DNA of 64,000 nucleotides from Iphione sp. A-MEVVRFRX5. Taxonomy: Eukaryota. Below, one piece after another: positions 12,845 to 57,056 of the stretch. The number at the start of each line of letters is the position of its first letter. Within the stretch, counting starts at the first letter, position 1. A model generated the notes under the pieces. It saw only the letters and a program-made list of their open reading frames with translations. It did not search any database and had not been told where the DNA came from. Location of the stretch: positions 97,588,001 through 97,652,000 of the forward strand of contig OZ320315.1 in NCBI GenBank assembly GCA_976226885.1, written 5' to 3'. The position numbers and the translations under genes are program-made.

Positions 12845-13127
12845 CTAGTCCAACAGTAATTCACCTGTCAATGGGACTAGGGCTTCACCGACATAATTTC
12901 TTCCAGGAAAGTTCCCTACTGGGATAGACACATCGTGAAGCCCAGAAGCACTCCCATAATACTATGTGGTGAGAACTCATCTTGGGTACTGAGTAGATAC
13001 TCTACATTGCCCGGGTTGTGTTTCAGTCTTTCTCGTAGAATATAAAAGGGAGTGTCTCTCTCTGTACTCTCCGAAAGAGCAGTCGTAGTGAGTCACCTAG
13101 CTGTCTTACCAAAGCAGGGTCCAATGA
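12845..13127 (-). pseudogene. C-terminal half of the NADAR domain of E2 ORF1
   Basis: LDPALVRQLGDSL..ILRERLKHNPGNVEYLLSTQDEFSPH..YYGS..FPGRNYVGEAL..stop 12845; frameshifted and absent from the ORF track. Confidence 0.78.
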
Positions 13128-14109
13128 ATTGAATTGAATTGAACAAAGTTTATTGAGCATAAGTGTCACCACAATCATGGTGTCTTTTCAACATACAGCT
13201 CTTCCTCAACATCTCTCCATAGTAATGCGCATACATAAATCATGTACCATAGGATAACTACCACGACTAAGTTACAACAGATTATACAACAAAATGCCAT
13301 CGAATAATCCTATCACCCAATAGACTTAATATATTTCTTTATATTCACTGATGGCGATCTTAATACTACTGCTGGTAAATTATTCCATCTCGATATGCCT
13401 TCTACGAAAAAACTGTTTGATATATTGATAAGTTCGGCTTCCCAAACTTCAACTGAACAGCTCTACCTACCCTTGTTGCTGTTCTTCTCTTAACCTCACA
13501 GATTCCTAGATCATAAAGGTCAGTGATCAAGTAAAGCAAATGGCAGTTTAGTCTTTCATTACAGTCCTTGATTTTGTTCTCTCAGCCACAATTGGACTGC
13601 TGATGTGCTCACCCATGTTGTCATCACACTAGATCGGATACTTCTATACCAAGCGTTTATCAATTGTTGGTAATACTTTTTACTTGCTCCCACTAGGAAA
13701 CATAGGCCATAGTCGAGGTGTGGAATAGCAAATGAAACAAATATTTTCTTCCTCAATTTCTCATTCAAGAAATACCCTGCACGCTTTATCAGGTATGCTA
13801 TCTGTTGGAGCTTCTTTATCTTATAACGTATCATATCCACAAAGGTTAACCTGTCATCCAGAAGCAACCCTTAGAATTTAAAACTGCTTACTTGACTTAG
13901 TTTCATATCACCTAATTTCACATCCAGACTAAAACCTCTTGCCTTCCCAAAGAGCATTACCTTTGACTTCCCTTCATTCAATACCAGAGCATTTTGACCA
14001 CACCAAGCATATATTATATTCAGAGCCAGTTGCAACTTGGTTCTTAACGCCAAGGCATTCGACCCAGTAGACAAGACAGTCACATTGTCAGCATAAGCGA
14101 CGATGTGAC
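13128..14109 (-). mobile_element. 5'-truncated LINE (RT C-terminal part + 3' UTR) inserted in the E2 NADAR
   Basis: begins SHIVAYADN; PHLDYG; hairpin CACCA/TGGTG 13167-13182; AATAAA; (TTCAA)n tail; TGA duplicated at 13125-13127 and 14110-14112. Confidence 0.85.
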
Positions 14110-14490
14110 TGATGTTTGACTGATTTTTCGCCCTGTCTGATTATAGTTGCTAGCACGTGCCCTTGTGGCCTGTAATGAATGCTCAGCTGTTGCATACGTC
14201 ACTCCTTGTAAGGTGACAGGTGTTGGATGGTAGGGTGACAGAGCATGCATAAGTGACCCCTGAACACTAACACATCATTAGCTTTAATTCATGTGGTACA
14301 GGTCAATGTCTCTGTGAATGTATAGTTCACCCTCTAGAGGAAGAGAAAGCCCAACTACATCAGCTTTTAACCTTTTTTTCGAACATGGCTTGCTATTTCA
14401 TGTAAATCTTGCTAAATTTGTTTTTGCCTCAGTATTGGAAGTACTTGTGATGTGTCTCTGAACACTCCTGCAAGGAAATCTGCATGGTAC
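14110..14490 (-). pseudogene. ORF1 CTD and N-terminal half of NADAR of E2
   Basis: KADVVGLSLPLEGELY (CTD; compare KASVNGLTLYVNDRSF at 45 kb); LSPYHPTPVTLQGVTYATAEHSLQATRARA. Confidence 0.78.
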
Positions 14491-14800: not shown

Positions 14801-14956
14801 TTGCTCCTAGGTCATACAGTGTACTACAGGAGCACAGCATTTATGATATCAGATCTTATTTGGCTTGCACGGTGACAAAAAAAACTGCTACATCTCTACA
14901 GATGCGACCTTCAGCTGTCATGAGGAATGAAAATCTTGCTTCATTCGAAAGGTATC

Positions 14957-14967
14957 CAAAATGGCGG
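14957..14967 (+). promoter_or_regulatory. YY1-consensus motif at the element 5' end (candidate internal promoter/initiator)
   Basis: CAAAATGGCGG, ending 34 nt before the ORF1 ATG; human L1 carries a YY1 site at its 5' end. Confidence 0.5.
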
Positions 14968-15001
14968 ACGAGTAGACGTGCCCTGCTGAGCTCTCCCGGT
15001 T

Positions 15002-16738
15002 ATGGTTAAAAACAGTGGTATTGGTCGCCACAAACTCAATCAGGATGACAGACGGCAATATACTAAGCCATCTACCCGTGCTGCATACGCTCTTAGGTCT
15101 GCAGAAAGCATGGATTATCTACCCTCGACCGAGGATACCTGTAAGAGTAGGGCTACAGCGTTGCTGAAAATGGACGCCAGTTTGAACCCAACGGTCGAGC
15201 TGACCAAACTAACTCTAGCTGAACTGGAGAAGTACTCTCAAAGTCCTTCTAACTCACGAAAGGAGGACTCATTGAGTATGGAAAGTGCAAGCAACATATG
15301 TGACTCATTGGAAATAACCCAATCTACAACTTGTACAGACAAAACAATGGGTACGCACCTTCATGCTGGCTCAACTGTCATCGGTAACGACACGATCAAG
15401 GTAGACAAGGCTTCGTTATCCAGTCATCTGCACGTCGGTGGGCCACTCATAAAGCCCATGTTTAAACGTGGTGAGGAGCTTATGAGTTCGACCCCCATGG
15501 TCCCGATCAGCACCCAGGAGTCAAACGTCATCCTATCTCCTATCCCCTCAACCTCCATGGGTGTCAGTCAAGAGATCTTGGACGAAATCAAACACTCTGT
15601 GGATAGCATCGAAAAGAAATTCATGGGTGAGTTACACTCTGTTAAGAATGATATCAGAGACATAAAGTTGTCATTGGAACAGTGTATTTCTAAACAGAGC
15701 CACCCGAGTAAAATGATGACATCGACTCTTGACAGCAAGATTGCTGTTATTGAGGCTAAGCTAAATGCACTGTCAGAAGGCTGCAATGAGGTAAAACTCG
15801 ATCTAACACGCCTAGAGATCAGAGATAGGAGCAGGCGCCTCGTAATTGAAGGTATTCACAAGAACAACAGACAGAACCTAATGAACTTCCTAGCAACTCT
15901 GTTTCATTCCATAGCGGGGATCAGGCGTGACGAAGTGTCAGATTGCATTGTTTACACTGAGTCCGGGAATTATCTTCGTGTCGGGGTTCTCCTGACCTCA
16001 CTTGAGGCTCGGAATCTTATTTTCCGTAACAGACACAAGCTTAGATCTGGAGATACTTCGGGCATCTACGTAAAGGAGGATCTTCCGACCTCGGCGGTCG
16101 ACATAAACAAAAAGCAGCAAAGGTTGGCAAAGAAAGCACGTGTGCAGGGAAGCAAGGCCACTGCCAGGGGCGTGGACTTAATAATCGATGGTGAAAAGTA
16201 TTCTCCTGCTGACATCCCCTACCTTCCATCCTACCTTCAAGATGACTCCCTCAGCACACATGTGACGGATAATGCGTACAAATTTGATGCTGACAACACA
16301 TTATTCTCACCTAACAAACTAGGTCCAGTGATTATCGAAGGTAAACAGTACGCCACGCCGGAAGTGGCTGCGCTATCGCTATTGTCTCGTGACGAACGAG
16401 ACTTGAAGCTCAAAAAAATTGTAAACAACTGTCGTAGTATTGCGGAGGCCAAAGGAGCACTCGATAATTCACAGGCGGATCAGTCATGGGAATCACGTTT
16501 GAAGGTAATACTATCAAGTGTATATGCCAAACTCCTTGAGGATAACTGTGTTGCTCGCGATGCGTTGATTTTGACGGGATCTCGACATATCTGCTTTATC
16601 GATCGCGACCATGTACTTGGAACAGGCGAAAAGTGGGTCACCCCTTTGAATGTCGCGCTTACGGATAACTACCCAGGAAAAAACCTTCTAGGAGAGGTAC
16701 TGATGGGGGTTCGATCACGACTCACAGCAAACACTTAA
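15002..16738 (+). CDS. E3 ORF1 (578 aa): disordered N-terminus, coiled coil, L1-ORF1p-like RRM/CTD, C-terminal NADAR-like domain (about 16277-16738)
   Basis: LEIRDRSRRLVIEGI (compare L1 LExRSRRNNLRIxGI); IYVKEDLP; IIEGKQYATPE; LILTGSRHICFIDRDHVLGTG; YPGKNLLGEVLMGVRSRL (NADAR terminal GxNxLGxxLMxVR). Confidence 0.9.
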   Translation: MVKNSGIGRHKLNQDDRRQYTKPSTRAAYALRSAESMDYLPSTEDTCKSRATALLKMDASLNPTVELTKLTLAELEKYSQSPSNSRKEDSLSMESASNICDSLEITQSTTCTDKTMGTHLHAGSTVIGNDTIKVDKASLSSHLHVGGPLIKPMFKRGEELMSSTPMVPISTQESNVILSPIPSTSMGVSQEILDEIKHSVDSIEKKFMGELHSVKNDIRDIKLSLEQCISKQSHPSKMMTSTLDSKIAVIEAKLNALSEGCNEVKLDLTRLEIRDRSRRLVIEGIHKNNRQNLMNFLATLFHSIAGIRRDEVSDCIVYTESGNYLRVGVLLTSLEARNLIFRNRHKLRSGDTSGIYVKEDLPTSAVDINKKQQRLAKKARVQGSKATARGVDLIIDGEKYSPADIPYLPSYLQDDSLSTHVTDNAYKFDADNTLFSPNKLGPVIIEGKQYATPEVAALSLLSRDERDLKLKKIVNNCRSIAEAKGALDNSQADQSWESRLKVILSSVYAKLLEDNCVARDALILTGSRHICFIDRDHVLGTGEKWVTPLNVALTDNYPGKNLLGEVLMGVRSRLTANT

Positions 16739-16837
16739 GTCGCATACTTATCTCTGACTTGATGATACCTTCTGCCTCACGCAAAATGGTCGTGTATTTT
16801 ATTTTGTCCTTTCTCTTACTTCTTCACAGCAAAAGTG

Positions 16838-17554
16838 ATGAGGTATCCGAGGCAGTATCAGGCAAGCCACTGTACAAGAATTCTCGTCATTGCCGACACT
16901 CAATCTGCGCCGGCCTTCTTGGAACTAGAATCGAGTCTTCATCTTCTCCCTCCTGTATCCATGCATCTAATAACGATCAAACGGTGCTCCTACAGGATGG
17001 TGGCCAAATGGCTATCATATGGGAATGTCTCGTCGTTCCATCTCGTCTTAGTTGCTGCCGGCATGTATGACTGGATGATAAAAAGGGATGGTGAGTGGAG
17101 TGTCCGTACAGGATCGCCGGCGATGTATGCGGACCGTCTCGACTACTATATGTCAAAGATTCTTCATTTGTGCAAGGGTGCCAGTGATGGAGGCCCACAC
17201 GTTGTTTTTTGTCCGGCAGCATGTGTTGATTTATCAGGCATGAATCCAGACATTGTGGACGACATGGATCAGTTCAAGATCAATGCTGCAGTAGTGATAC
17301 ATAACATCAGATGTGAGGGCTCCTCCAGCTCGATAGGCATTTTCCCATGCACCCTTGCCACCCCTGTCACCCATCCTAGTATGGGTGACATTGTGAATAA
17401 CTTCGACCACCTGAAAGCGGATGGTTTCCGGCCAAAGGACACAACCATCTGTGAGTGGAGCTACACTATCAGACTCTTCTTACACGAATACATCAGTTTT
17501 TATGGTTACTACCATATCAGTAACAACGGCCCTCTGGTTCACATCAATCACTGA
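16838..17554 (+). CDS. E3 ORF2: SGNH-hydrolase-fold protein with substituted catalytic residues
   Basis: same position as the SGNH ORFs of E1/E2/E4/F; ILVIADTQ (block I), VAAGMYD (block III), VVFCP, ADGFRP (block V); ATG at 16838 (ORF track starts at GTG 16835). Confidence 0.72.
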   Translation: MRYPRQYQASHCTRILVIADTQSAPAFLELESSLHLLPPVSMHLITIKRCSYRMVAKWLSYGNVSSFHLVLVAAGMYDWMIKRDGEWSVRTGSPAMYADRLDYYMSKILHLCKGASDGGPHVVFCPAACVDLSGMNPDIVDDMDQFKINAAVVIHNIRCEGSSSSIGIFPCTLATPVTHPSMGDIVNNFDHLKADGFRPKDTTICEWSYTIRLFLHEYISFYGYYHISNNGPLVHINH

Positions 17555-18261
17555 GGTATATGTCCTGTAATGACTTGGACAACTTAAAACTGACCAACTA
17601 TGACTGCTCCATAACCGGGAGAGCACAGGCCCCATTTTCTTCTTGTCCCTTGCTAGTACAGTAGGAGCTTAGATACCTCAGAGCAGGAGCTAAAAACTGT
17701 TCATATAGTGTGTCCTATGTCAGGCCAAAACTTGTGGTCGTGTTACACAGAAATGTATCACTTGTATTCCAGGCTCATAGTAATCTGTGATACACTGTCC
17801 GTTTTTCCGGCCAAAAGACTTGAAGTGGTATTATTTATCAACTTTTCATTAATATTCCAGCCTTAAAATTAACCTGTGATACATTGTTTGTCTATTTGTT
17901 ACATTTACTAATCATCTCAATTATATACTAGGCTTGAAATTAATCTTGATGCGTTGTCCTTCAAAGTGTCATACCATTGAACCTACATACTCGTATATTC
18001 CTTCTTTATGTAGGACTAGACTCACTATCTCAGATTCCATTTCCCCAATCCCTTATGCTTTCTTTCTGCTTTCTTCGCAGCATTATTACCCCAATCCCTA
18101 TCCAAGCCTGTACTACCTACCTGTTGACACCAAAGAAATTTATCCGTGTGTACTTAGATGTATTCTTATCCTAGTAAACTCTGAAGTGTCCTTTCAGTTT
18201 CATGTACTTAGCTTACCCTTGAAGCCTTAGCTATAAATTCATCTATTAGTATCATAACGGG

Positions 18262-21039
18262 ATGTCTATCCCAGGCATTTTTCTCATATTATTTCTATAC
18301 TATATCCATGTATCTGTAAACATGACGCCTGGATTGAAATTTGTATGCTATAATATACGTAGCATTACTAAAAAAGTTGAAGATGTCCGAGTCTTGCTTA
18401 GTAATGAAAAGGTTGATGTTTGCCTTATTACGGAGACTTGGCTAAACGAGACAGTGGATGATTCATCGCTTGAGATCAATGGTTACAGCTTTGTTAGACA
18501 TGATAGACATATGTTGGGAAAGAAAAGGGGTGGTGGTATTCTATTTTACTACAGATCGAATTATGAAGTTCAAGCTGTAATGAGGCATCATCATCCCGAC
18601 TCCAAGTGTGAGATCCTAGGCATTACCCTAAAAGCTGGCAATAGGAAACCTATCGAAATCTTGGGGATTTACAGACCACCAGATGACCCCATTAGTGATA
18701 CTGAAGTATGCCTGTCCGTAGCATCAGACGAATTTTTCTCATCGAAAGGCACTGACAGAATTGTCATGGGTGATTTTAACTTTGACTTTACAGAGCATAC
18801 AAAAGTGGGGGGAAAGTTAGTTGATCTACTCTCTCGCCTGGGTCTCCGTCAGTTAATACATGAACCAACGATGATTAACTCTAACAACTGCTTAGACCAG
18901 ATCTGGGTTGACTTTAGTGACCACTCTGGGGGTAAAACACTTGATTATTTCTTTAGTGACCATCTACCTATATCATTTACCATGAAGAAAGGAGTAGGCT
19001 GGAGGAAAAAGGAGGAGATCACACTTCGTAACTGGTCTAATGCTAACCCAATTGAAATACACAACATGTTAGCTAGGGAGGGTCTGCTAGCTAAAACAGG
19101 TAACCATGAAGATAGGTGGGAGAACTTCGAAGATGCCATTCGCAGTTATCTTATAGATAAATGCCCTGAAAAAACTGTCACTGTGAAGAGGGATAGAAAT
19201 GGTTTCGTACCAAGTGCAGCTCTGCTGGACCTAATAGAGGATAGGAAGTACTTTTTTCGAAAATGGAAGAGACTGGGTGACATTGACAGCAAGAGAATAT
19301 TTAAATTTCTGAACAAAAAGGTTAGGGCGTGTCTTAGAGCAGAACGGCGCATCTACTGGGACTCTCAGATTAGTAATGCAAGATGTGACTCCAAGGCTAG
19401 CTGGAATCTCCTTAACAAGGCAGTTGGAAGGAGAAGTGAAACGGTTACGCTCCCGAGTGAAACTAAGGCTGAGGGTGTCAATCTGGCCTCAGCCTTTAAC
19501 TCACACTTTATAGAAGAAGTCACCAGCCTAACAAAAAACCTTTCTCCAATCGCAATAGATCTCTCCAATAAGGAGACAGATGGCTTTGAACTCCCCATTC
19601 CTGATCCAACTGAAATTTTGCAATGTGTACAAAAACAAAAAGTGTCCAAACCTTCAGGCATCCAAGGTATACCAACCAAGATCCTCAAGCCTGTACTGAT
19701 ACTGTGCCATGAATTTCTGACCTGGATATTCATGCAGTCGCTGTTGCATGGCATGTTTCCAACTGTTTGGAAAAATGGTGTAGTGACTCCAATCTATAAA
19801 AAGGGGGATTCCGACTGTCTTCAGAATTACAGACCTGTCACCATACTCCCACTACCAGGCAAAATCTTCGAATCATGGTTCTGTGGTAAAATCATGGGTT
19901 GGATTGAAGACTCTAGTCTTCTCTCGACGGCACAACATGGCTTTAGGAAAGGTCGCTCGACAGAAACTGCCATCACTAGCCTCCTATGTCATCTACAAGA
20001 AAAATACAATGAAGGCAAGCACACATGTGTCCTACTCTTTGACTTGAAAAAAGCCTTCGATGTTATCTCACATAGGAGACTACTGCAGGTGCTAGAACAA
20101 AAAGGCATAGGCCCGGTAACAAGAGCTCTGATCAGCAGCTATTTAACTGGTCGCAAGCAATGTGTGTTATGCAAAGGTGAAAGGTCACAGTATCTGCCAG
20201 TGACACAAGGAGTTCCACAAGGCTCAATAATGGGGCCTAATGCGTTCACTCTGGTGATAGATGACATAGTCACAGCTCTTCCTGAGGGATGCTACCCCAT
20301 ATTGTATGCAGATGACCTAACGGTTTCAGTTCATGCTGGTAACATATTGAAGCTTAGAAGCATTGCGCTAGATGCACTAAACAGAGTGTCTGAATGGTGC
20401 AAGAATGCTGGTCTTGTGCTAAGCAGAGAAAAGTGTTCGTACGTTAGCATTGGAAAAACCTGTGGCTTTGACTTGGACCTTAGTCTGGGGGGTACATCTC
20501 TTAAGAAAGTTGACAGTGCGCGTATCCTGGGCTATCAATTCTCATCAGACCTGAAACCGATTAGGACCCTCAGCCATGTAAAGAAGCTAATGTGGTTGGC
20601 GTGCCTGAAAATAGGGAGAGCCAAGCACCTGCTACCATTAAGGGCTAGGAAAATCCTGTTCACCTCACTGGTGCTAAGCCACTTGAACTTCCATGCTGTG
20701 ATGTTGTATGAGCTGTCAAAAAATCAAAAATCAAAACTTCAAAGCTTTGTAAATAGATGTGCTCGTGTATGCTATCAGTCTAAGGACTTTCTCTCAGGGA
20801 GACTATTGACCAGCAAGTTCTCTGTGCCCATTGTAACGAGTCTTCTGGATGAAAAAGGAACCAAATCTGTAGGTAAATTAATGAAACTAGGTTCACTTCC
20901 AGAGGCTACTAGGACTAAAACAAGACGTGGGTGTCTATCCCGAGGCCTAGTACCAAAACCTATGAGTGCCGGTTTTAGGCGCTCGCTAAGATACAAGGCT
21001 GTATTGAGCTGGAATTCTGAGTTCTATGTTAAGCTTTAA
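18262..21039 (+). CDS. E3 ORF3: intact APE endonuclease-reverse transcriptase (925 aa; likely start Met at 18322)
   Basis: YNIRS, TETW, YRPP, GDFN, LDQI, SDH; NYRPVTILP, QHGFR, DLKKAFD, GVPQGS, YADD; C-terminal SLRYKAVLSWNS; no RNase H. Confidence 0.97.
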   Translation: MSIPGIFLILFLYYIHVSVNMTPGLKFVCYNIRSITKKVEDVRVLLSNEKVDVCLITETWLNETVDDSSLEINGYSFVRHDRHMLGKKRGGGILFYYRSNYEVQAVMRHHHPDSKCEILGITLKAGNRKPIEILGIYRPPDDPISDTEVCLSVASDEFFSSKGTDRIVMGDFNFDFTEHTKVGGKLVDLLSRLGLRQLIHEPTMINSNNCLDQIWVDFSDHSGGKTLDYFFSDHLPISFTMKKGVGWRKKEEITLRNWSNANPIEIHNMLAREGLLAKTGNHEDRWENFEDAIRSYLIDKCPEKTVTVKRDRNGFVPSAALLDLIEDRKYFFRKWKRLGDIDSKRIFKFLNKKVRACLRAERRIYWDSQISNARCDSKASWNLLNKAVGRRSETVTLPSETKAEGVNLASAFNSHFIEEVTSLTKNLSPIAIDLSNKETDGFELPIPDPTEILQCVQKQKVSKPSGIQGIPTKILKPVLILCHEFLTWIFMQSLLHGMFPTVWKNGVVTPIYKKGDSDCLQNYRPVTILPLPGKIFESWFCGKIMGWIEDSSLLSTAQHGFRKGRSTETAITSLLCHLQEKYNEGKHTCVLLFDLKKAFDVISHRRLLQVLEQKGIGPVTRALISSYLTGRKQCVLCKGERSQYLPVTQGVPQGSIMGPNAFTLVIDDIVTALPEGCYPILYADDLTVSVHAGNILKLRSIALDALNRVSEWCKNAGLVLSREKCSYVSIGKTCGFDLDLSLGGTSLKKVDSARILGYQFSSDLKPIRTLSHVKKLMWLACLKIGRAKHLLPLRARKILFTSLVLSHLNFHAVMLYELSKNQKSKLQSFVNRCARVCYQSKDFLSGRLLTSKFSVPIVTSLLDEKGTKSVGKLMKLGSLPEATRTKTRRGCLSRGLVPKPMSAGFRRSLRYKAVLSWNSEFYVKL

Positions 21040-21742
21040 TGTGATCTCTTGTATTCTATGAACTGCAGTGAAAGCAGTCAAATGCATCTTTTGTATTAGG
21101 TTGGTTAATTATTGCATCATTTTTGGTGTATTCTAGTAGTAAAATTCTATAATTAATTCTACCTTTTTACCTACTTGATATTAAACTTTATCCTAGACTG
21201 CTAGGGATCACACAGCGAGTAATAACTATGCTGCTATGATTCCATAATCTAAAGTAATGGGTCACATTGTACGTTATGTAATGTATCCTGTGTTTTTCTT
21301 AAAGATTACTTTCTGTGACATGTTGCTGTACATACAGTCAGTTATTCATCTATGTAATGATGATAATGATTATATTTCGCCTATTGTACCATATTATGTG
21401 TCCTTTATGTTCAAGATATGTCCACATTTGTAATCTCACTATAAGTGAAATTCTCTTACTTCTCTGTCATTTGTGCTGCAAAATATGTTATGTTACTATG
21501 CAAAGTATGTAAGAAACATGAACACGAGTTTTCTGACGGTGTAATGTAATGTATACTCCTATTGAATAATTATTGCTCACGCTCTTGACTATCGATATCA
21601 AATGCTACTTTCATACGTCATATACTGTTTTACATTGTATCTATGTCACGACATGTTTCATTTTGCACTTACATTTGAATTTATATTCTGTAATCTTTTT
21701 GTATTCCGTTTGTAATTGTATTTCTGTAATTTCCAAGACAAG

Positions 21743-21797
21743 CTCCTGACCTGTATCATGGAGAAGGAAATAAACTATCTTGAAACTTGAAACTTAA
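21743..21797 (+). other. LINE 3' recognition hairpin, poly(A) signal and microsatellite tail
   Basis: CTCC-TGA-cctgta-TCA-t-GGAG 21743-21763; AATAAA 21769-21774; CTTGAAACTTGAAACTTAAA. Confidence 0.75.
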
Positions 21798-21897
21798 ATG
21801 AAATTTGGGCAACTATCACAGGTAGCAGCATAGAGGGTGGCCCAGTCATTTCTGTAGACTGGGCAGATAGTTAGGAAGTAGATTTTGTTATGTCTTG

Positions 21898-29912: not shown

Positions 29913-32900
29913 AATGAATGAATGAATGAATGAATTTTATTAGTCAAATCTTTGTCCTATTACAAAGTTCTCCTTGACCAATCATGTGAACGACAGATAG
30001 ACAACTCACAACATATATGGAACACTTACACTAGTAATCATTACACAACATTCAGATACACAAGACGACACAGGACATTACACATCGTGGATATATGTAT
30101 AGGTTTCAATCCCAATCGTGCGGTCCCTATTGTGGCCACAATGCTCGCTGTCAGTGTATGTCTGAACCACTTTAATCTAGAAGAATGGTAATGTTGAACT
30201 TGCTGTCCAGCCCTTTTAGATTTACCAGGAAATATGATAGTTACCCCATTCAATATTCATCTAAATGTCCCCCCTTACATTTGCCCGTATCTGCCCGTCT
30301 GTATCCCTCGTTATTATGACCCAGATGCAAGCCCCCCGCCTTATGTCTTTCCCCAATTGCTAGTTCACCCAGCTGCACTGCTATGTCCCTGTGGATGACC
30401 TTACCTCCCGCTCTTCCCCCATATAAATAAACCTATTGTAGCATTACCACCCATACCACCCATACTGACTTATATAGCCGTGTAATCCCTGTGCCTGATC
30501 CCATTTTGAGTCCAATCGAGATGTCCTTTACATTGTGGTTTCCCTTTAAGGGCCCCCTACTGCAGTTTGGCTACTCTGTCAATCTGTAGTCAGCTGATGC
30601 AAATTTTTGGACCATCCTTGTCCTAGCCGAGGTTGTAGCTTCTTTCTTTCTTTTGCTTCTGACGGCAAGCGATTCCATGCGACAACCGCCCCATACCGTA
30701 TGCTGTTCACAAACTTCTTACTCTTGGGCTTAGGGACTTTAATTCGCATAGTTGAACCGCCCCTAGTGTGTGACCTCTCTGCCATCGGTAGTATGCCAAG
30801 GTGAACTAGCCTGTGTACCACCTTGAGTGCCCTTGTCTCAATCTTATCCGACACCCGTTCAATGTTGAACGTTGCACACAGTTGTTTGGCCATTAATAGC
30901 CTCCCTCGCAGCACACCTACTCGCAGGCAATGGTTTAAGTGAATTTGCAGATTGGTCTTGCTTGTCTCCGGTAAGCAGTAGAGGAATGCAGCTCCATAGT
31001 CCAGGTGCAGCAACACAAGGGCCTTGAAGAGATGCACCCAAATTGTTAATGGTAGCAGTGCCTTTACCCGGCCGAGCTTTACGGCCGCAACCCACATCTT
31101 AGATTTGATGTCCTTTAACATCTCCCGCTGGATTAGTCTGTCGTCCACCACATAGCCCAATAGCCTGATCTTTCTTTCCATCTTCAGTTCTGCTGTGTAT
31201 ATTTGCAGATCCAATTGCGTCGAGGCAGCTTTGCCGAGCACCATATAGTTACACTTTCCTTCGCTCAGCATCAGACTATTTTCCTCGCACCAATTTGTTA
31301 CACAGGTGATGACATGCTGTGCATTTCCGCGCAACCGAAGTAGATCTCCTGCAGTGACCACTACTGAGAGGTCGTCCGCATAAAGCGTGGCATGGGCGTA
31401 AGGGGGTAGGCTGTGTGTCACGTCATCTATGATGATCGAGAACGCGCTGGGTCCAAAAATCGACCCTTGTGGCACTCCATGACGGACTTCTCTTAGGTCT
31501 GAGTCATGGCCTCCGCTTCTGACAAATTGTCTGTGATTATTAAAGTACCCAGCGATTAACTTAAAGATCTTCAGACTGGCACCAGCTCTCGACAAACGTT
31601 TAAGTACACCAGCAGATGGCACTAGATTGAACGCTTTTCGAAGGTTGAATGTTAAGAGACAACAAAAGAGACCCATATTCAGCGCCTCTTGTGCCCGATT
31701 GTTGACGCAACTGAGTGCCGTCTCTGTGCTTCTCCCCTGTCTGAATCCTTGTTGGTCTTGGCCTACTTGGTTCTGTTCCTCTAGTCACTGCATTATTCTC
31801 TTAATGAACCAGCCCTCAAACACCTTGCCCGGTAAAGGCAGTATTGAGACCGGTCGGTAGTTCGATAGCAAATTTCGGTCTCCCTTCTTGTATATGGGTG
31901 TAACCCGGGCGACCTTCCAACTTTCCGGGTATCTCCCAGAGTTGATTATGTTGCACAGAAGCGTCGTGAAGAACTCCAGGCATGCCAGCAGAAGGGGTCT
32001 CAGGACGCGAGTCGGTATCCCCTCCACGCCCGATGATTTCTTTAATGCCTGCTTCGCTATTAGAAGGCCGATTTCCGTTGGCGTCGGAGGGTCCAGGTCG
32101 AACTTGACCATGTGACGCGAGCTCGAATGTCCCGTTGTCACTGGCTTTGCCAGACGTTCCACCTCATCTATGAAGTAGTTGTTGAAACGGGTTGCCATCG
32201 TGGCGCCATCCCTGTCGGCTGCCCCCTCCTCAGATAGTGTCTCCAGAGAGGGCAGGATCATCTCGCCTCTCTGTCTGCCCATCATCTCATTTGTGACCTC
32301 CCACAGCTTCGCCGAGTCGCGTCCTGCAGCTCTCAGTCTTCCATGCCAGTACTCCTTCTTTATCGCAGACATGGATTTGCGCACCTCATTGTTCAAATAT
32401 TTTAAAATCCTCTTTGCATCCTCATCGCCGGTCTTCTTCCAGCGTCTGAAGAAGTAGCGTCTGTCCTTGATCAGTTCTCGTGTTCCATGGTCCAATTCCA
32501 GGCCGTCATCACGTTTTGCAGAGCATCTCGTAACCATAGGACAGACTTCTTCCAAAATACTCTTCACTCATGCAGCGAAGATGTCCCATGCTTCGCCTGG
32601 CTCCTTTCGAGTCCGGTAGACCATCATCCATCAATCTCTGGTACAGGTTGGCCACATCCACTCTATCCCAGCATCTGGTTTTGTAGGTGGTCCTGTGAAT
32701 ATTGCGGTGTCCTTTCTTGATATGCACTACAATAGGTAGGTGATCACTCATGAAGTTTTCTGGGTAATACACCTTCTCAACTCCAGCAAAGTTTACCCAG
32801 CAGTGGTCCAGGCATCTTGCTGTGTTCACCATTGTTGCAGAGTCCACCACCTGTACCAGTCCCTTACCGCTTAGCAGTTCTGTCATCGCCCTGCCCCCTC

Positions 32901-33452
32901 TCTCACAGCTCAGGTAGTCGTAGTTGAAGTCTCCTGCTATCACTAGATCACTTCTGCCATTGTTAACCTCCTTGTGTATAGCATCTTGCAGGGCAGCCAC
33001 TGAATCCTTAACCTTGTCATGGGGAGGGTGATATACTGCAACTATCATAAACGGTCGCCTTTGTCCTGCTTTTAGTTTCACCTTTAAGACTTCACAGATG
33101 CTGTTCTTGTGGCCTCTGTTTTCAACAGAAATCACATTGATATCACTTTTCACATACAACCCCAGCCCCCCTCCCCTTTTCCCCCCTTCTACCTCCCTGT
33201 CCTGTCTGATGAAAGTATAGCCAGGTATTGTTATTTCCCCATCCCCATGAGTGGCATTCAGCCAGGTTTCTGATATCACTCCCACATCTATGTTTTCTTC
33301 TCTTAGCAGACTCCTAAGATCCCCTACCTTTTTTCCCAAACTTCGAATATTGTACGCAAGAACTCTGAAACCCCCCATAGTGTCCCAATCGTACAGTTAA
33401 GTAAACGATGTACCTGTGTATGACTGAGGGAATCATAACCAGCACATCGTAT
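29913..33452 (-). mobile_element. Element B: LINE truncated just upstream of APE-RT, inserted in E4
   Basis: APE 32509-33378 (YNIRS, SETW, GDFN, SDH), linker 31785-32567, RT 30579-31676 (PQGS, YADD); hairpin CTTTGT/ACAAAG 29950-29967; AATAAA; (ATTC)n tail; GGT duplicated at 29910-29912 and 33453-33455; E3 family. Confidence 0.92.
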
Positions 33453-34039
33453 GGTGAATAAAGTAATACCATCTATAATCTGCATCAAACCTACTTCCTG
33501 ACTGAGCTGTTGACATCTTTTTGTGTGACATACTTCTTAACAAGTCCACATTCATATTGCGATAATACTACACAGCTTATCTCCTATAGATAGCAATTAA
33601 GTGATGTTTTTTTCCCTTTTTCCCGTCTTACAAGTAAATGAAAATACGTGTCTTAACTCTGTAGGTGAAGCTTGATCATTTATAATGTTAACATCTAATC
33701 CTCACTTATAGTATACCACAATCCCTCCACCTATGTGAAGTCCTTACTCGTAATAGGTATGATCTTGTCTAGCTAGGAGGTATCCATCTTTATGGATAAC
33801 CGATGATGGAATTTTCTCTCCTGACCATGTTTACGTCACCACTAGCACATCAATATTTTTGCTATTCAAATAAAACTCTACTTATCACAGCTTTCCTAAG
33901 AGACTATGCACATTCCATGTGCAAATCCTAAATATTGTCATCCAACCTCAGTTGTGTCCCAAGTGTTGGAGCAATATACCCCCATCCAACCCCCACTTAC
34001 ATGTGTTCCCTCATAGGTCAAGCATCACTGCCGGGGCGA

Positions 34040-34377: not shown

Positions 34378-35664
34378 CTAACTCGACAATTCACTACGAA
34401 TCTCCATCAGCGCCTTGCCCGCCAAATTTTTACCGGCCCATGTTTTTTCTCCTATTTTTTTTCCGAAAGATTACAACCAGTGGCCAGGACTGGGTCCATC
34501 CCAGCCACAAGTATGTCCATGTCTCCAGTCACCTCAAGTCCATGCTTGAAGGAATTACTCACTTTTAACTTCGGAGACCCTCTTTCAATACTTCAACTTG
34601 CATGCGTTACCAGTCGGTGCTATCCCTGATAGATTGAGCCAGCTGAATAACGCAGTCTGTGTCCTCCTCCAAAATAATGCGTTCACATAGATCCACCTTG
34701 CAATGAAGAAGGGCTCGTTCTGCAGCCATGCAATGGTTGATTGACTGCTCAAGTTCTATTGGTGCAGAATTTGACAGAGCAGTGTACTTACCCCCAACTA
34801 CAGTCGCAGTGTCCATTTTACGTAAGCAGGTGTCCTCTTGGGTCAAACCACTAGCACATTCATCCTGCTCCAAGTATTCTCCCCCTCCACCTCATTTAAG
34901 CCTTGAACTATCATGTTAGATGAATGCCTATCCATCTGTGAATCGACCACCTTACAGATCATCATTTGCATCTACCGACTCTCGCATCTTACCCTCAAGC
35001 ACATGCATTTTTGTATCCACTGCATCCGCTACCTTCTCTTCAATTGAGCTCTCCACCTCAGCTAATCTCTCTGATAGTTTATCAAGTTTCCCAATTAGGG
35101 AGGCAGTGTTGTTCACAAACTTCAGCTACTGAATTATCAAGTTGGGGAAACGTGAAATTATAGCCTTATTTGATACCAGCTCACCCTTGATTTCATTGCT
35201 TCATTTATGCCAGACCATTCTGAAATATGGGGAGAAGTGCCCAATTTGGGAGAACAAACCACAGTCTCGAGTTGAATCAAGTCACTGCTAATTAGGTCCT
35301 GTTTATTCGACTCATCTGTATCCCCAAGGGGCACTGGTACTGCTCTTGATGCAGGTGGGTACATACCTGGGTAATCAGATTCAATTGTAACCGTTGCCAT
35401 ATCAGTGTTATTAATAGAGACAGGGGAAGGTATACTATGCACTGGCGGTGATCCGACCGGGGCGATATTAGAGTTAACACTAGCGCCTGCCTGACTGGTG
35501 CTGCATGATTCCGTAATTTCTTCCTCCTGAGGTTGATTCCTCTGTGGATTTGCCCTTCCACGAGTATCTGGGGCATTGTCAGATCGATTTGCTAGCTTAG
35601 CTGCCGCCTTCCTCGATTTTGGGGGCACCATGTTTCGATTATTTCTTCTTTTTCGATGCTCCAC
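34378..35664 (-). pseudogene. ORF1 of E4: disordered N-terminus, coiled coil, NADAR (about 34800-34378)
   Basis: ALSNSAP..HCMAAERALLH..RIILEEDTD..DW..VLKEGLR..LEVTGDMDILVAGMDPVLATG..WAGKNLAGKALMEIRSELSS-stop (across frameshifts). Confidence 0.82.
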
Positions 35665-39639: not shown

Positions 39640-40500
39640 CTAGTTTCTTTTCAAATTCTTAATAAATTTTTCCAGCAATAGTACAAGTTTGATTTTTCCA
39701 GCCCTATTGAAGTGGCAGCCATCTCCAAGCATTTTATAGCTAGTAGCCCTCTCACCCCTTCTTCTCCTATATGTGAGGTATCCTATAATGTCCATTCTGA
39801 AAATTGACATCAGTGATTGTGTGGTTGACATCCCTTAAGATTACATTTGCTGCGTGTTGTGTTTCAGTGCTACCATTCAAATCCTTGATTCTATTGATAT
39901 GTATATTGTACTTAACCACATTTATACCTGGAATAATCCCTAGATAAAAAAAATAATTATGTCCAAGCTTATTGTACAATCTGAAACTGGCTTCCTCGAT
40001 TATGGTCAACATGTTATTGACTACCTTTTCGGCTGAGGTACTTCTCAGTTCAATTGTGGCATAGCTGTCCCCACTCTGGTCATGCTTCAAACTCTTCTTG
40101 GTGCAATTACTTATGCCACCTAGCAAAATCTCTCCCATTATAACACCAGGATTAACGCTTACCTGTTCTAACTCCTGTACAAGTCTGTCCAACCATGCTC
40201 CAGGGAACATAAGTACTGACACCTGTTTCCCTACATCCCCCATCATACGTTCGAGGGCTGCACCTCTTGTGTCTGTCACACAATCAGGGATCTACTACTT
40301 AAAATATCACAATAGCCTTTAGCTTTTTTCCCTGCTGCCGCTGCCCTCTCTGGCGATGTGTACGATCTGCTCTGTGCGCCTCTCGCGCATGTGGTCTCAT
40401 CCCCTTTTGTTCGTCTGTACCGAATCGTCGTCCAGGAATCCCCACGCTTTGCACCCCGATGTTACCAATTTGCCACTGCTCCACTGTTAGTAGTAGTCAC
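39640..40500 (-). pseudogene. conventional esterase-type LINE ORF1 (basic N-terminus + SGNH)
   Basis: SWTTIRYRRTK..SP..DIL then SLIVTDTRG, MFPGA, LLGGISN, LGDGCHF; no NADAR upstream. Confidence 0.75.
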
Positions 40501-41194
40501 TGCCTCTGTTATACTACAAGGAAACGATGTAACAATCAGCATATACATATAATTGCTCAGCAGTTTCACAGACAATTATATTCATAGTTCCGAACTTCTC
40601 ACAACACTTGTTATAATTATCCAATTGTGTCTCAACAATAAACTAGCTCAGTAATCTCACCTCTCACTAATACTACAGCTTTGCCCGTGTAGTTTCTGCC
40701 AGGAAAATTCCCTACTGGAATCAATGCTTCATGCAGTCCACAAGCGATCCCATAAATGGTGTGATTTGAAACTTTGAGAAATTTTTTACTTTGTCTTTAG
40801 CAAGTGTTCGATAGTGTCCGGATGTTGTTTGTAGCGTTTGCTGAGGATCATGGAGAGTGCCTCTCTCTGCACCCTCCGACTGTGTCCATGTGAGTGGGAC
40901 GCGCAACACAACATGTCTGTCATGATGCCTTTACACCTCCGAAAAGCAAGTTCTCTTCAGAAGCTGGCAGCTGCCTCCAGTGTTGTGCACCTCCATACTA
41001 GCTGTTTTTGCTCAGCTATGTGGGAAAGACACATTTTCATAGCTGATGGTACTGTTTCACCCCGTGCTATATACTATAATCGGAAGCAAATTGAGCGATA
41101 CAGAGTGTCCTCTAATTCTCTAATTCACCATTCACCCTAGTCGTGCTGTCGGATCACCAAGTTATTTCCTTCGCCCCTCCACAGCTTCTTCTGT

Positions 41195-43329: not shown

Positions 43330-46081
43330 ATCCTCTGCTATGGCCAGGCTTAGCTTTCTCATAATGTCAAGGGTACCGTGATATGCAATGGATGGTGGTA
43401 CATACCGGTGTCCTGAGTCCAAAAAATATTTTTCTGATGGGATATGTGCATTCACGCCACTGTAAGACAAAGTCTATTATGATTCTCCTATCAGAGGGCT
43501 GTTTCTCAGGAGTTGACAGCATTGGACTAGCTACATACCATGGAACAGAAGGGGTTGATGCTCTGGACCAATTACAACATTATACAATAGCTTGGTATCG
43601 ATGTACTTTTGCACAGCATGCAGGTATTTGGTAGATGAAATGAAATTTTCATCAAAATCAAATAAAATGTCTGGACCTTTGTAACCAATGGAGGAGCCAT
43701 AAAGGATGTTATTATAAATGAAACTGTCTAGTGGGCTCAACATGAAATGCCCACCCACTCTGATATGGCCAGGTGGGTGGGCAGGGGGATTTTAGCTTCC
43801 AGTTGGTTGGGCCTGCCTGTTTTTTGGACACTGGAATAAACCAAAAAATTGTAGTGATGGTTTGGGTCAATGGTTGTATAAGGGGTTGGCCATGACAGGA
43901 GGTGTGTGAGGGTCATTGCATTGTATTGCAGTCCTGCCAGCAGCTGAGTTGTTGTCATGCCGGGGTAGCTGTCTTGTATCTAGGTGACCCAGTCCGGTTC
44001 CGACTCACTGCCATTCTTCCTGTCGGCATCTTTGGGCCTGCGGCTGTATGTTGGATTGTGGCCGCTGCTGCTGTTGCAATTTCTTCCTGAGTCGGCATGC
44101 CTCTGTCTTGTGTTCGAACCTCCTGCTTAAATGATAAAGGCGATCTAGGGCATGCATGTATTATCATGAATACCTCATTACCTTCAGGTTTTTATCACAC
44201 TTCCTGCAGCCACTGGGGGCATATAACCACAGAGTCTTTCTTGCTTTGCATCAACAACTTTCCCTTCCCCTTCCCTTTGATTCGAGGTAGTCATTAATGG
44301 CCCTGGTTTTGCATAAGTGAGCCACATGCTTATTACCCCAATTAAACTTTTTCTTTTTGGCTGCATGCCATAATTCCATGACCCACTGTCTCAGCGGGGG
44401 CCACAGCAATGATATTGCCTCCTCGGAAACCTCTGCTAGGTGGGTGAACAAAATAGTTTGATCTTTTATCAATCTGGCTAGGCCAACGATATACTGTGGA
44501 AAAGTCAGTCCTTCAACATCTGGGATGTCAGACTTCTTGAAATAGATGTATGTAGCAGGGGAAATTAACTTTTTCTTCTTACCTGCCATAGAAATTGCCG
44601 AAGGGTAGATGAGTCCAGCTATCTGCTGAAATGTGTGTGTTGCCTCGTTGCACAGCTGTTCTGGTGGTGGGAGTTCATTTTCCTTGGACTCCTCTGACTG
44701 TGTGACATTACTGGTTGTTTCCATGTGTTGTCCTCTTACTGCCGCTTCGAGGAACTCTGTATGGGTCTTGATAAGTTTAACCCTTTTAAGAACTTTGTAT
44801 AGCTGTGCGTTTGTATTTTGCCTGGAGACCCTGCAGCTTCTATGCATGAGATGGTGTGTGAAGCCTATTTATATAACTGTGGTTCAATAAGCCGCTACCA
44901 CGGGGCCTGTTACCTCGCAAATCCTTACAAGCACATTCTTCCCTTGGGCTTGCGAGGCGTAGCACATCCTTCATGCATTGTTCTCTGCTTTCCTCCTCCG
45001 TCTGTCACTATACCTCAACTTGGTCTGCCGTTTGGAGAATTTCTCGTTCAAGAGTCCCCTGCTGTTTCAGCCTTTTTTGCTTGATATGCGTGTTCGGCAC
45101 TCTGGTAAATTGTATCCTTGTGTTGAAAGGTAGCTTGATATAGGTTGCTCAGACTCGCACATGGACTTTCAAATACCACTCTGTCGTCCGTGACCGCCTG
45201 CTTCTTCTTGTCCAGTGTGAAATCCGCGGGTAGGTTACATAACTCCCTCGCCTTGAATGAGCGATCGTTCACGTATAAGGTCAAACCATTCACTGATGCC
45301 TTATGCCCCTGAGCCTTTGCCAGATTCATGATCACCCTCATCTCGCCTTGTTGTTCCCTTTGCTTGACTGTCAGATCATTAGAGAGCCATATGTTTGAAC
45401 CTTTCAGTTTGTTCCTGCTCTTCATTACCGCAAAAATTATCCTCCTGGGCCAGGAACTTCACTACCAGCTCGCGGACCCCTTTGACTGATTCTTTACTTA
45501 TCCGGTAACAGCCTCCAACAGCCCTCCTATTCACTTTTATCCCTACTTTGCATAGTCGAGTCTGTACCTCATCAGACGGTTTCTGTCCCTCCTTCCCAGT
45601 TAATCCGCTGACCACCTGTGTGTTTGACCTCATGGCCTTATCCATTTGTGACAGACTCGACCTCCGTTTGGTTAGTTTTTTTAGAGTTGACTTCTCATCG
45701 GGTAGTCTCACTATCTCGATTCTTAGCTCCTCATTCTGTTTAGCCAGGTTCTCATTTTTTTGAGCCTCCGCCGAATCACCCTGAATTTTCTTTACCTCCT
45801 TTTCCATGTTCTCCCAACTACTGTGCGTGCCCTTAAATGTTGCCTCCATTGTTCCAAATTCTTTCTGTGCCTGCCTTCTTTCCCTTATGTATCGATGAAG
45901 ACACCTTTCTCTCCCTCTTTTTTAGCTCTCTGTTGATCACCCCTTTACAATACATCAGAATCCTCTCCTGCCTGTGTTCCCTGTTCATCTCTAGTATGTC
46001 ATATATTGTTTCCGCCAATTCCTCATGCTCGCCTCGAACCTTTGTCCCGTCTAATACTCCAACCTGGCCCTCTTGAGTCAC
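43330..46081 (-). mobile_element. Element E5: DIRS/Ngaro-type retrotransposon remnant whose gag region begins with an L1-like ORF1-NADAR
   Basis: coiled coil/RRM/CTD 45190-46081; NADAR SLSNLYQATF..YQSAEHAYQAKKA..REILQTAD..EQCMKDVLR..PGKN (45180-44765); Ngaro-like gag LTFPQYIVGLARLI..HLAEVSEEA..W..LRQW (44251-44600); RT start SIGYKGP..VQKYID..IGP, SPMLSTPEK..RRIIID..SGVNAHIP (43330-43758); 3' part lost. Confidence 0.75.
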
Positions 46082-56936: not shown

Positions 56937-57056
56937 TTATCGTCGTTCCTTCTGCAGCTCATTACGGACAGCGGTTAGAAGTTTTCCGGAGTGATTCTTA
57001 CCAAGCGTGGTGATGTAGCGGCAATACCACAGCCCCAAAAGTCATCTGCAGCAATA
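56937..57056 (-). pseudogene. NADAR C-terminal remnant of element F ORF1
   Basis: IAADDFWGCG..(frameshift)..GKNHSGKLLTAVRNELQKERR-stop, 33 nt before the SGNH ATG. Confidence 0.8.

What the first reader, a model, noticed from the sequence alone, without database searches (positions are those of the whole stretch)
15002..16738. Retrotransposon ORF1 proteins fused to a NADAR domain: six divergent copies in 64 kb
Seen: an L1-ORF1p-like coiled-coil/RRM/CTD followed by NADAR-type motifs (FSN-x-Y, Y-x-S/T-x-E, LRAKF-x-QN, LL-x-TG, D-x-x-WG-x-G, G-x-N-x-LG-x-x-LM-x-IR) at 10052-10535, 12845-13127 plus 14110-14270, 16277-16738, 34378-34800 and 44765-45180. The 56937-57056 copy keeps only the terminal motifs. 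The copies differ strongly from each other, so this looks like an old, diversified family trait and not one accident. Established: NADAR/YbiA enzymes hydrolyse N-glycosidic bonds, and characterised members remove ADP-ribose from guanine in DNA (DarT1-NADAR toxin-antitoxin, phage NADARs). Known Jockey/CR1 ORF1 accessory domains are PHD, CCHC knuckles and esterase; I know of no described NADAR-ORF1, but could not check. Inference: the RNP carries an eraser that protects its RNA/cDNA or target site from host ADP-ribosylation, i.e. a transposon counter-defence system.
Basis: partly seen in the sequence, partly recalled or inferred. Interest (0 to 1): 0.95.

Follow-up and report, generated by a model that had tools for sequence, protein, structure and literature searches.

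The report
LINE ORF1 protein carrying NADAR domain
Jumping genes (LINEs) in this animal genome really do carry a NADAR enzyme domain, a type known to strip ADP-ribose off DNA, on their RNA-packaging protein. In the one intact copy here that domain has lost key catalytic residues, and the fusion itself was noted briefly in a 2025 paper.

Summary
A profile built from genome relatives finds NADAR pieces at all six stated sites (E 5e-64 to 0.03) and none in shuffled or reversed controls.

The flagged ORF (15002-16738) folds into a coiled coil, RRM and CTD like human L1 ORF1p (Z 9.5), followed by a NADAR fold (Z 16.8 to 8bau). It is ORF1 of an intact 6.85 kb three-ORF LINE at 14953-21804. ORF2 is a separate SGNH-fold protein and ORF3 is APE-RT.

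The fusion is old and very common:
- There are thousands of candidate sites in this genome.
- At least 1,158 public 50%-identity clusters match at E<=1e-30.

It is not undescribed. PMC12477816 (2025) mentions NADAR in ORF1 of oyster Tx1 LINEs in one sentence. This scan has also reported the fusion repeatedly on other DNA of this genome.

The "eraser" reading is untested, and it is contradicted for the flagged copy. That copy and 12 intact relatives have replaced K50, E125 and W133 with other, mostly hydrophobic, residues, yet the domain stays under purifying selection (dN/dS 0.19-0.37). Its esterase-like ORF has also lost its catalytic triad. Other lineages, including the broken copy at 10055-10992, keep all catalytic residues.

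The parts
14953..21804 (+). Full-length three-ORF LINE. It has a 49-nt 5' UTR, a 765-nt 3' UTR, and ends in CTTGAAACTTGAAACTTAAATGAAA with no poly(A) tail.
   Evidence: A 92%-identical copy on contig C19 aligns from exactly 14953 to 21804. The sequence was read.
15002..16738 (+). ORF1, 578 aa: a disordered N-terminus (aa 1-185), then coiled coil, RRM, CTD and NADAR.
   Evidence: Open frame. AlphaFold2 model m83ea13047eb1 has pLDDT 83-93 over aa 190-410.
15569..16240 (+). L1-ORF1p-like core: coiled coil aa 190-275, RRM aa 279-360, CTD aa 363-413.
   Evidence: Foldseek to 2yko gives E 4.7e-5 and TMt 0.59. VIA to 2ykp_B gives Z 9.5 with 182 aligned over model 229-433. RRM matches reach Z up to 9.8. 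No Pfam match.
16274..16732 (+). NADAR-fold domain (aa 425-577) that is probably catalytically dead. E43 is kept; K50 is L, E125 is F and W133 is L.
   Evidence: VIA Z 16.8 to 8bau and 12.5 to 2b3w. Pfam NADAR E 1.3e-7 at 32.4 bits, below the cut-off. Residue table. dN/dS 0.19-0.37.
16838..17554 (+). Separate second ORF (238 aa from the ATG). It has an SGNH/GDSL fold with a degenerate triad: Ser to Thr22, GxND to GMYD, DxxH to DGFR.
   Evidence: Three stop codons separate it from ORF1. Foldseek to 8gr2 gives E 1.2e-5 and TM about 0.5-0.6. Alignment A2. dN/dS 0.03-0.28.
18262..21039 (+). APE-RT ORF, 925 aa, with no C-terminal CCHC motif.
   Evidence: Pfam RVT_1 E 7e-33, Exo_endo_phos E 2e-9, Exo_endo_phos_2 at 26.9 bits. 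Homologues are about 950 aa and carry PF14529 plus PF00078.
10055..10992 (-). Broken ORF1 C-terminal half of a different lineage. Its NADAR is canonical (E43, K50, E125 and W133 present) with one frameshift near 10165-10210.
   Evidence: Pfam NADAR at 58.9-61.1 bits, above the cut-off. HMM E 1.8e-22 with alignment.
9381..9888 (-). SGNH-like second-ORF remnant of the same element. Its APE-RT remnants lie at 4363-8722(-).
   Evidence: Mid-ORF HMM E 5e-9 and 3e-3. tblastn with ORF2.
14083..14274 (-). N-terminal NADAR fragment (YATAEHS motif: E43 kept, K50 is R). Its C-terminal piece lies at 12848-12961(-), separated by another LINE fragment.
   Evidence: HMM E 1.2e-4 and 0.03. ORF2 hit at 13661-14101.
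34381..34592 (-). C-terminal NADAR remnants in two frames, lying upstream of an APE-RT at 30672-33932(-).
   Evidence: HMM E 3e-4 and 1.3e-3. ORF2 tblastn shows 38-40% identity.
45036..45813 (-). Decayed ORF1: RRM/CTD plus the first 40 residues or so of NADAR, with E43 and K50 kept. It abuts an unrelated retroelement gag-like ORF at 44251-44847(-).
   Evidence: N-terminal HMM E 2e-14 and NADAR HMM E 1.2e-3. tblastn E 1e-7. Searches cover the neighbouring ORF.
56940..57041 (-). Terminal NADAR helix only (GKN-x-x-G-x-LL-x-x-R).
   Evidence: HMM E 5.8e-3. tblastn E 4e-4.
40635..40796 (-). Possible seventh NADAR remnant (weak), upstream of an SGNH-like remnant at 39655-40129(-) and an RT at 36350-37162(-).
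   Evidence: HMM E 0.07. Mid-ORF HMM E 1e-3. for the RT.

Best explanation
The flagged ORF is ORF1 of an intact three-ORF LINE of a CR1/Jockey-like type.

Shown:
- Its protein is an L1-type RNA chaperone (coiled coil, RRM, CTD) with a YbiA-type NADAR domain at the C-terminus.
- It is followed by a free-standing SGNH-fold protein and an APE-RT.
- The ORF1-NADAR fusion is ancient and widespread among invertebrate LINEs.
- In most lineages all catalytic residues are kept.
- In the lineage of the flagged copy, K50, E125 and W133 are lost. E43, W89 and the fold are kept under purifying selection.

Inferred:
- In catalytically intact lineages, the domain rides on the RNP and cleaves an N-glycosidic ADP-ribose-base adduct on the element's own RNA, its cDNA or the target DNA during target-primed reverse transcription.
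- In the flagged lineage the domain no longer hydrolyses. It most likely serves as a non-catalytic binding or structural module of the RNP.
- The same fate has befallen the esterase-like ORF of this lineage.
For: - Architecture: open frames, Pfam, AlphaFold2 models with Foldseek and VIA matches to L1 ORF1p, NADAR and GDSL esterases.
- Element ends come from a 92% copy.
- Spread: PF08719 gives 4,416 first-look candidates in the genome. All 150 that were scored pass the cut-off, mostly in 500-700 aa open frames.
- 75 scored relatives of this ORF1 share 38-92% identity with it.
- A profile search finds 1,158 public representatives at E<=1e-30, most spanning RRM/CTD and NADAR in one stretch.
- A public contig shows ORF1-NADAR followed by APE-RT.
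- Catalytic state: six genome lineages and about 70% of 166 public domains keep E-K/R-W-E-D/N-W. The flagged copy and 12 intact relatives have K50 as L/G/C/F, E125 as F/Y and W133 as L/F. Residue roles are from PMC11543638.
- Constraint: NADAR dN/dS is 0.19-0.37 in six pairs, and the second ORF gives 0.03-0.28.
- E454 (= E43) and W496 (= W89) are invariant across all 18 aligned proteins.
Against: - No activity, binding or expression data exist, and no sequencing run could be listed.
- 'Dead' is inferred from mutagenesis of bacterial and oomycete NADARs. A changed mechanism or substrate cannot be excluded.
- dN/dS between LINE copies mixes selection on the active lineage with neutral decay, and several pairs have saturated dS.
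- No host ADP-ribosyltransferase that writes on bases was found (inconclusive).
- The RT clade was judged by proxies, not by phylogeny.
Confidence: 0.6

Rival explanations
1. Its NADAR would be an active eraser that removes host-written ADP-ribose from the RNP's RNA, cDNA or target site, acting as a transposon counter-defence.
For: - The NADAR fold is intact.
- E43, D130 and W89 are kept.
- The domain is under purifying selection.
- NADARs of several subfamilies hydrolyse N2-guanine-ADPr (PMC11543638, PMC11125620).
- Invertebrate nidoviruses, including an oyster virus, also carry NADAR and macrodomains (PMC11848433, PMC12377751).
Against: - K50 and E125, both needed for hydrolysis and for rescue from toxicity in E. 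coli C7 NADAR, are hydrophobic here and in 12 relatives.
- The Pfam score is below the cut-off.
- No writer enzyme was found.
Confidence: 0.08
2. In catalytically intact lineages the NADAR does not counter a host defence. It would instead process the element's own RNA ends or caps, for example an NAD cap or ADP-ribose-phosphate intermediates, as predicted for viral NADARs.
For: - PMC12477816 suggests a role in processing RNA intermediates.
- Nidovirus NADARs sit beside methyltransferases and RNA-end enzymes.
- The domain is fused to an RNA-binding protein.
Against: - No NADAR has been shown to act on RNA caps or ends.
- Nothing in the element suggests a partner ligase or phosphotransferase.
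Confidence: 0.15
3. The NADAR pieces are captured host exons or chance motif matches, and are not a functional part of the LINEs.
For: - Four of the six window copies are short, decayed fragments.
- A stand-alone NADAR open frame also exists in the genome (L001).
Against: - Controls gave no hits.
- The domain is in frame with the RRM/CTD in 21 intact ORF1s and in more than 1,000 public clusters.
- dN/dS is below 0.4.
Confidence: 0.01

Closest known systems
ORF1 proteins of Crassostrea gigas Tx1 LINE families in Repbase, noted as carrying YbiA-family NADAR domains (PMC12477816, Genome Biol 2025)
   Same: A LINE ORF1 protein with a YbiA-type NADAR domain in a lophotrochozoan. Function is unknown, and that paper suggests RNA processing.
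   Different: - That paper gives one sentence and an alignment figure.
- Here the ORF2 looks CR1/Jockey-like: about 925 aa, PF14529, no CCHC, no poly(A).
- Here the element has a third, SGNH-fold ORF.
- One whole lineage here has lost the catalytic residues.
- Whether the clades really differ was not tested by phylogeny.
Ectocarpus Gypsy LTR elements with an N-terminal NADAR in Pol (PMC12477816)
   Same: A retrotransposon-borne YbiA-family NADAR.
   Different: It is an LTR element with the domain on Pol, probably of bacterial origin. It is not fused to an RNA chaperone.
Human L1 ORF1p (PDB 2yko, 2ykp; type II ORF1p)
   Same: Coiled coil, RRM and CTD in the same order (Z 9.5, 182 aligned).
   Different: - About 10-13% identity and no Pfam match.
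- Here there is a long disordered N-terminus and an extra C-terminal NADAR domain.
Esterase-bearing ORF1p of CR1/L2 LINEs (for example ZfL2-1; from my own knowledge of Khazina & Weichenrieder 2009 and Schneider et al. 2013, not re-read here)
   Same: An SGNH-fold accessory module in a CR1-like LINE.
   Different: - Here it is a separate cistron after ORF1.
- In this lineage it lacks Ser, Asn and His of the catalytic blocks.
DarT1-NADAR toxin-antitoxin pairs, phage NADARs and P. nicotianae NADAR (PMC11543638, PMC11125620)
   Same: The fold (Z 16.8 to 8bau). In canonical LINE lineages the same catalytic residues (E43, K50, E125, D130, W133) are present.
   Different: - No adjacent or known cognate transferase.
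- Eukaryotic mobile-element context.
- The flagged copy lacks K50, E125 and W133.

Membership tests
NADAR (PF08719, YbiA subfamily) | Profile match above Pfam's gathering score | tested here: not met
   The intact ORF1 scores 29.0 and 32.4 bits against a cut-off of 35.1. The broken copy at 10111-10977 does meet it, at 58.9-61.1 bits.
NADAR (PF08719, YbiA subfamily) | NADAR/YbiA fold | tested here: met
   VIA Z 16.8, rmsd 3.1, 164 of 189 aligned to 8bau, and Z 12.5 to 2b3w. Foldseek E 6.5e-5 and 1.3e-4.
NADAR (PF08719, YbiA subfamily) | Catalytic residues E43, K50 and the YbiA-family E125 (P. nicotianae numbering) | tested here: not met
   In the intact ORF1, E43 is kept, K50 is L and E125 is F, with W133 as L. 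The residues are present in the copy at 10055-10992 and in genome loci L004-L012.
NADAR (PF08719, YbiA subfamily) | N-glycosidase / ADP-ribosyl-base hydrolase activity | not testable with these tools
   Needs an enzyme assay.
L1-type (type II) ORF1p | Coiled coil, then RRM, then CTD | tested here: met
   Helix aa 190-275, RRM 279-360, CTD 363-413. 2ykp_B gives Z 9.5 over model 229-433.
L1-type (type II) ORF1p | Sequence-profile match to L1 ORF1 families in Pfam | tested here: not met
   No Pfam family at E<=1 for aa 1-400.
SGNH/GDSL hydrolase (second ORF) | SGNH fold | tested here: met
   Foldseek to 8gr2 gives E 1.2e-5, and 25 GDSL-type chains match at E<=1e-3 with TM 0.45-0.64.
SGNH/GDSL hydrolase (second ORF) | Catalytic Ser (block I), Gly-x-Asn-Asp (block III), Asp-x-x-His (block V) | tested here: not met
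   This lineage reads ADT, GMYD and DGFR. Genome relatives L004 and L009 keep Ser and DGxH, and L009 also keeps GSND.
CR1/Jockey-group LINE | APE plus RT ORF of about 900-1000 aa, no C-terminal CCHC, and a short-repeat 3' end without poly(A) | tested here: met
   Pfam, homologue architectures, 3' end read. L1 ORF2p is no closer than R2 in the PDB.
CR1/Jockey-group LINE | Placement of the RT in that clade by phylogeny with reference elements | not tested
   No labelled reference RT set (Repbase or Dfam) was available.
Tx1 LINEs with NADAR-ORF1 (Repbase, C. gigas) | RT of the Tx1/L1 group | tested here: inconclusive
   Human L1 ORF2p matches only the RT core at E 4e-10, no better than R2 at 8e-11. 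The L1 endonuclease is not matched. There is no CCHC.
ADP-ribosylation writer/eraser conflict system (DarTG1-like) | A cognate base-directed ADP-ribosyltransferase in the same genome | tested here: inconclusive
   PF01375 and PF03496 gave no match, but the control genomes did not ring either.

The most novel reading that the evidence does not exclude
Invertebrate LINEs with catalytically intact ORF1-NADAR may carry a working nucleic-acid de-ADP-ribosylase. It would defeat a host (or viral-defence) system that marks guanines in retrotransposition intermediates, a eukaryotic counterpart of phage NADAR against DarT1. Lineages such as the flagged one would have repeatedly turned the domain into a non-catalytic ADP-ribose reader or decoy.
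Probability: 0.2. Interest if true: 0.85.

Novelty: new variant of a known kind. Interest (0 to 1): 0.6.

Why it matters
The roles of animal NADARs are unknown. PMC11125620 says so explicitly and lists molluscs and other invertebrates as carriers. Many of those "animal NADARs" may in fact be LINE ORF1 proteins.

A retrotransposon RNP carrying an enzyme that reverses base ADP-ribosylation would point to an unrecognised layer of conflict between host and mobile elements in animals. It would parallel macrodomains and NADARs in invertebrate nidoviruses.

Catalytically intact and degenerate lineages sit side by side in one genome. That gives a natural experiment for separating enzymatic from structural roles.

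Tried and rejected
- Word-indexed protein search with ORF1, both whole and aa 235-578, returned nothing. The exhaustive profile search shows this blank is a limit of the index.
- Sequence search of the PDB with the intact NADAR part found nothing meaningful. A canonical relative found 2b3w and 8bau.
- Pfam on the ORF1 N-terminal 400 aa gave no family.
- A search for a pierisin/cholera-type ART writer (PF01375, PF03496) in the genome gave no match. The controls were silent too, so this is inconclusive.
The adjacent ORF at 44251-44847(-) belongs to an abundant gag-plus-RT retroelement family. Five other copies of that family have no NADAR or ORF1 part within about 1.3-1.5 kb upstream. No Pfam RT or recombinase lies in the window ORFs there. 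I read this as two elements abutting, not a fusion.
- Stop-codon read-through from ORF1 into the second ORF is rejected, although both share a frame. Three stops lie between them.
Full report
**What is there.** The window is a LINE-rich stretch of a 1.18 Gb animal genome (G000:C4:97588001-97652000). tblastn with the intact ORF2 finds at least a dozen APE-RT remnants on both strands.

The flagged ORF at 15002-16738 (578 aa) is followed by a 238-aa ORF (ATG 16838 to 17554) and a 925-aa ORF (18262-21039). The last one carries Exo_endo_phos and RVT_1. ORF1 and the second ORF share a frame, but three stop codons separate them. A 92%-identical copy on contig C19 aligns from exactly 14953 to 21804. 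The element is therefore 6.85 kb long, with a 49-nt 5' UTR and a 3' end of CTTGAAA-type short repeats without poly(A).

**Checking the observation.** Pfam finds NADAR (PF08719) in the intact ORF1 only below its cut-off (29-32 bits against 35.1). In the broken ORF at 10111-10977(-) it scores well above the cut-off, at 58.9-61.1 bits.

I built an HMM of the NADAR part from 19 ORF1 proteins found elsewhere in this genome and ran it against all six-frame fragments of the window. Shuffled and reversed fragments give nothing below E 1. tblastn with 166 public domains finds the same six sites.

Only the copy at 16277-16732 is complete and open. The copy at 10055-10533 is nearly complete with one frameshift. 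The other four are remnants of 20 to 70 residues.

An AlphaFold2 model of ORF1, built on an 18-sequence alignment, has confident structure from residue 190 onwards. Residues 415-578 match P. nicotianae NADAR 8bau at Z 16.8 (rmsd 3.1, 164 aligned) and E. coli YbiA at Z 12.5. Residues 229-433 match the human L1 ORF1p trimer at Z 9.5 (182 aligned), and RRM matches reach Z up to 9.8.

**The rest of the element.** The second ORF has no Pfam match, but its model matches GDSL/SGNH esterases. Foldseek gives E 1.2e-5 to 8gr2, and 25 chains match at E<=1e-3.

A second ORF of 180-300 aa follows ORF1 in 20 of 21 genome loci with an intact ORF1. Remnants follow the copies at 10055-10992 and 40635-40796 in the window. 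A public contig shows a two-ORF version without it.

ORF2 homologues are about 950 aa and carry PF14529 plus PF00078. The protein has no C-terminal CCHC motif. In the PDB, human L1 ORF2p (E 4e-10, RT core only) is no closer than R2 (E 8e-11). I could not run an RT phylogeny with labelled references.

**How common and how old.** PF08719 gives 4,416 first-look candidates in this genome. All 150 that were scored pass the cut-off, mostly in 500-700 aa open frames. The flagged ORF1 has 75 scored relatives at 38-92% identity, many of them intact.

A profile of 18 ORF1 proteins finds 33,535 public representatives at E<=1e-3 and 1,158 at E<=1e-30. Most of the best 150 match from the RRM/CTD through the NADAR in a single stretch. 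The named examples are few:
- a Haliotis rufescens protein with seven NADAR stretches;
- Atlas clusters whose few recorded members are annelids.

**Prior description.** The full-text library holds one paper that links NADAR/YbiA with LINE ORF1. That paper is PMC12477816 (2025), which describes NADAR in Ectocarpus Gypsy Pol. It adds in one sentence that ORF1 proteins of several Crassostrea gigas Tx1 LINE families in Repbase also appear to have YbiA-family NADAR domains, perhaps for processing RNA intermediates. The fusion is therefore not unreported, but it is barely described. This scan has also noted it many times elsewhere in this genome.

**Catalytic state.** PMC11543638 gives the residues that matter, in P. 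nicotianae numbering.
- E43 and E125 hold the distal ribose.
- K50, W89, R93, D130 and W133 hold the pyrophosphate.
- In E. coli C7 NADAR, the equivalents of E43, K50 and E125 are needed for guanine-ADPr hydrolysis or for rescue from DarT1.

I mapped these positions through a phmmer alignment of a canonical genome relative to 8bau and 2b3w. Six genome lineages (L004-L012) and the window copy at 10055-10992 keep E43, K50, W89, E125, D130 and W133.

The flagged ORF1 and 12 intact relatives keep E43 and W89, and most of them keep D130. In all 13, K50 is L, G, C or F, E125 is F or Y, and W133 is L or F. Eleven of these relatives, at 41-66% identity, are in alignment A1. Among 166 NADAR domains in the 149 best public hits, about 70% have the canonical set. 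The rest show assorted losses, often E125 changed to Y, C or F.

The same pattern holds for the second ORF. The flagged lineage reads ADT, GMYD and DGFR where SGNH enzymes have GDS, GxND and DxxH. L004 and L009 keep the Ser and DGxH, and L009 also keeps GSND.

**Constraint.** Nei-Gojobori dN/dS was computed between six pairs of intact relatives with unsaturated dS.

| Region | dN/dS |
|---|---|
| NADAR part | 0.19-0.37 |
| Coiled coil, RRM and CTD | 0.02-0.18 |
| Disordered N-terminus | 0.22-0.40 |
| Second ORF | 0.03-0.28 |

At protein level the second ORF is more conserved than ORF1 (66-87% against 41-66% identity). Both degenerate domains are therefore retained by selection on the active lineages, even though they lack the catalytic residues.

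**Interpretation.** Three things are shown:
- the architecture;
- its age and spread;
- a split into catalytically intact and degenerate lineages, both under constraint.

The rest is inference. In intact lineages the NADAR, tethered to an RNA chaperone that coats the element's RNA in cis, probably cleaves an ADP-ribose-base adduct on RNA, cDNA or target DNA. In the flagged lineage it probably acts as a non-catalytic binding or structural module, since half of the ADP-ribose site (E43, W89) is invariant.

The counter-defence idea remains attractive. N2-guanine ADP-ribosylating proteins exist in shellfish and butterflies (CARP-1 and pierisins, cited in PMC11543638). Invertebrate nidoviruses, including an oyster virus, carry NADAR and macrodomains. 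However, no writer was found here (inconclusive), and nothing has been assayed. An RNA-end or cap-processing role is a live rival.

**Verdict.** This is a new variant of a known kind: a LINE ORF1 with an accessory domain, where the NADAR version has been mentioned once in print. Three aspects appear to be undescribed:
- the three-ORF layout;
- the apparent CR1-like backbone;
- the conserved pseudo-enzyme state of both accessory domains in a whole lineage.

Noticed in passing
window 44251-44847 (-); loci L051-L055: This 198-aa ORF belongs to a very abundant retroelement family (2,249 first-look candidates). The family has a gag-like ORF of about 320 aa with no Pfam match, overlapped by an ORF carrying RVT_1. 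It abuts the decayed ORF1-NADAR copy at 45036-45813. Five other copies of the family show no NADAR or ORF1 part upstream, so I read this as two elements abutting and not as a DIRS-NADAR fusion.
   Followed up: partly
L001 = G000:C22:27634916-27638365 (ORF at L001:1360-2346:-): A 329-aa open frame holds a full-length NADAR domain scoring 174 bits, far above the LINE copies at about 105 bits. It may be the host's own stand-alone NADAR gene or exon.
   Followed up: partly
P0001 (Haliotis rufescens XP_048255699.1, 4,240 aa): This annotated 'uncharacterized protein' has seven NADAR stretches, four of them within the first 1,500 residues. It could be a tandem NADAR host gene or a gene model stitched from LINE ORF1 copies.
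   Followed up: no
window 17555-18261: An unusually long spacer of about 700 nt with no ORF lies between the SGNH-like ORF and the APE-RT ORF of the intact element. It is conserved at about 92% in the C19 copy. How the third ORF is translated is unclear.
   Followed up: no
L043-L045 (ENA ERZ26222911 contigs): Three identical copies of a two-ORF relative are present: ORF1-NADAR of 438 aa, a 367-nt gap, then APE-RT of 964 aa. It has no esterase ORF, so the SGNH cistron is a variable add-on.
   Followed up: partly
window 1-64000: The window holds at least a dozen APE-RT remnants and six or seven ORF1-NADAR remnants of mutually distant lineages, several of them nested. This is a LINE graveyard, and the clustering of copies has no functional meaning in itself.
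   Followed up: partly
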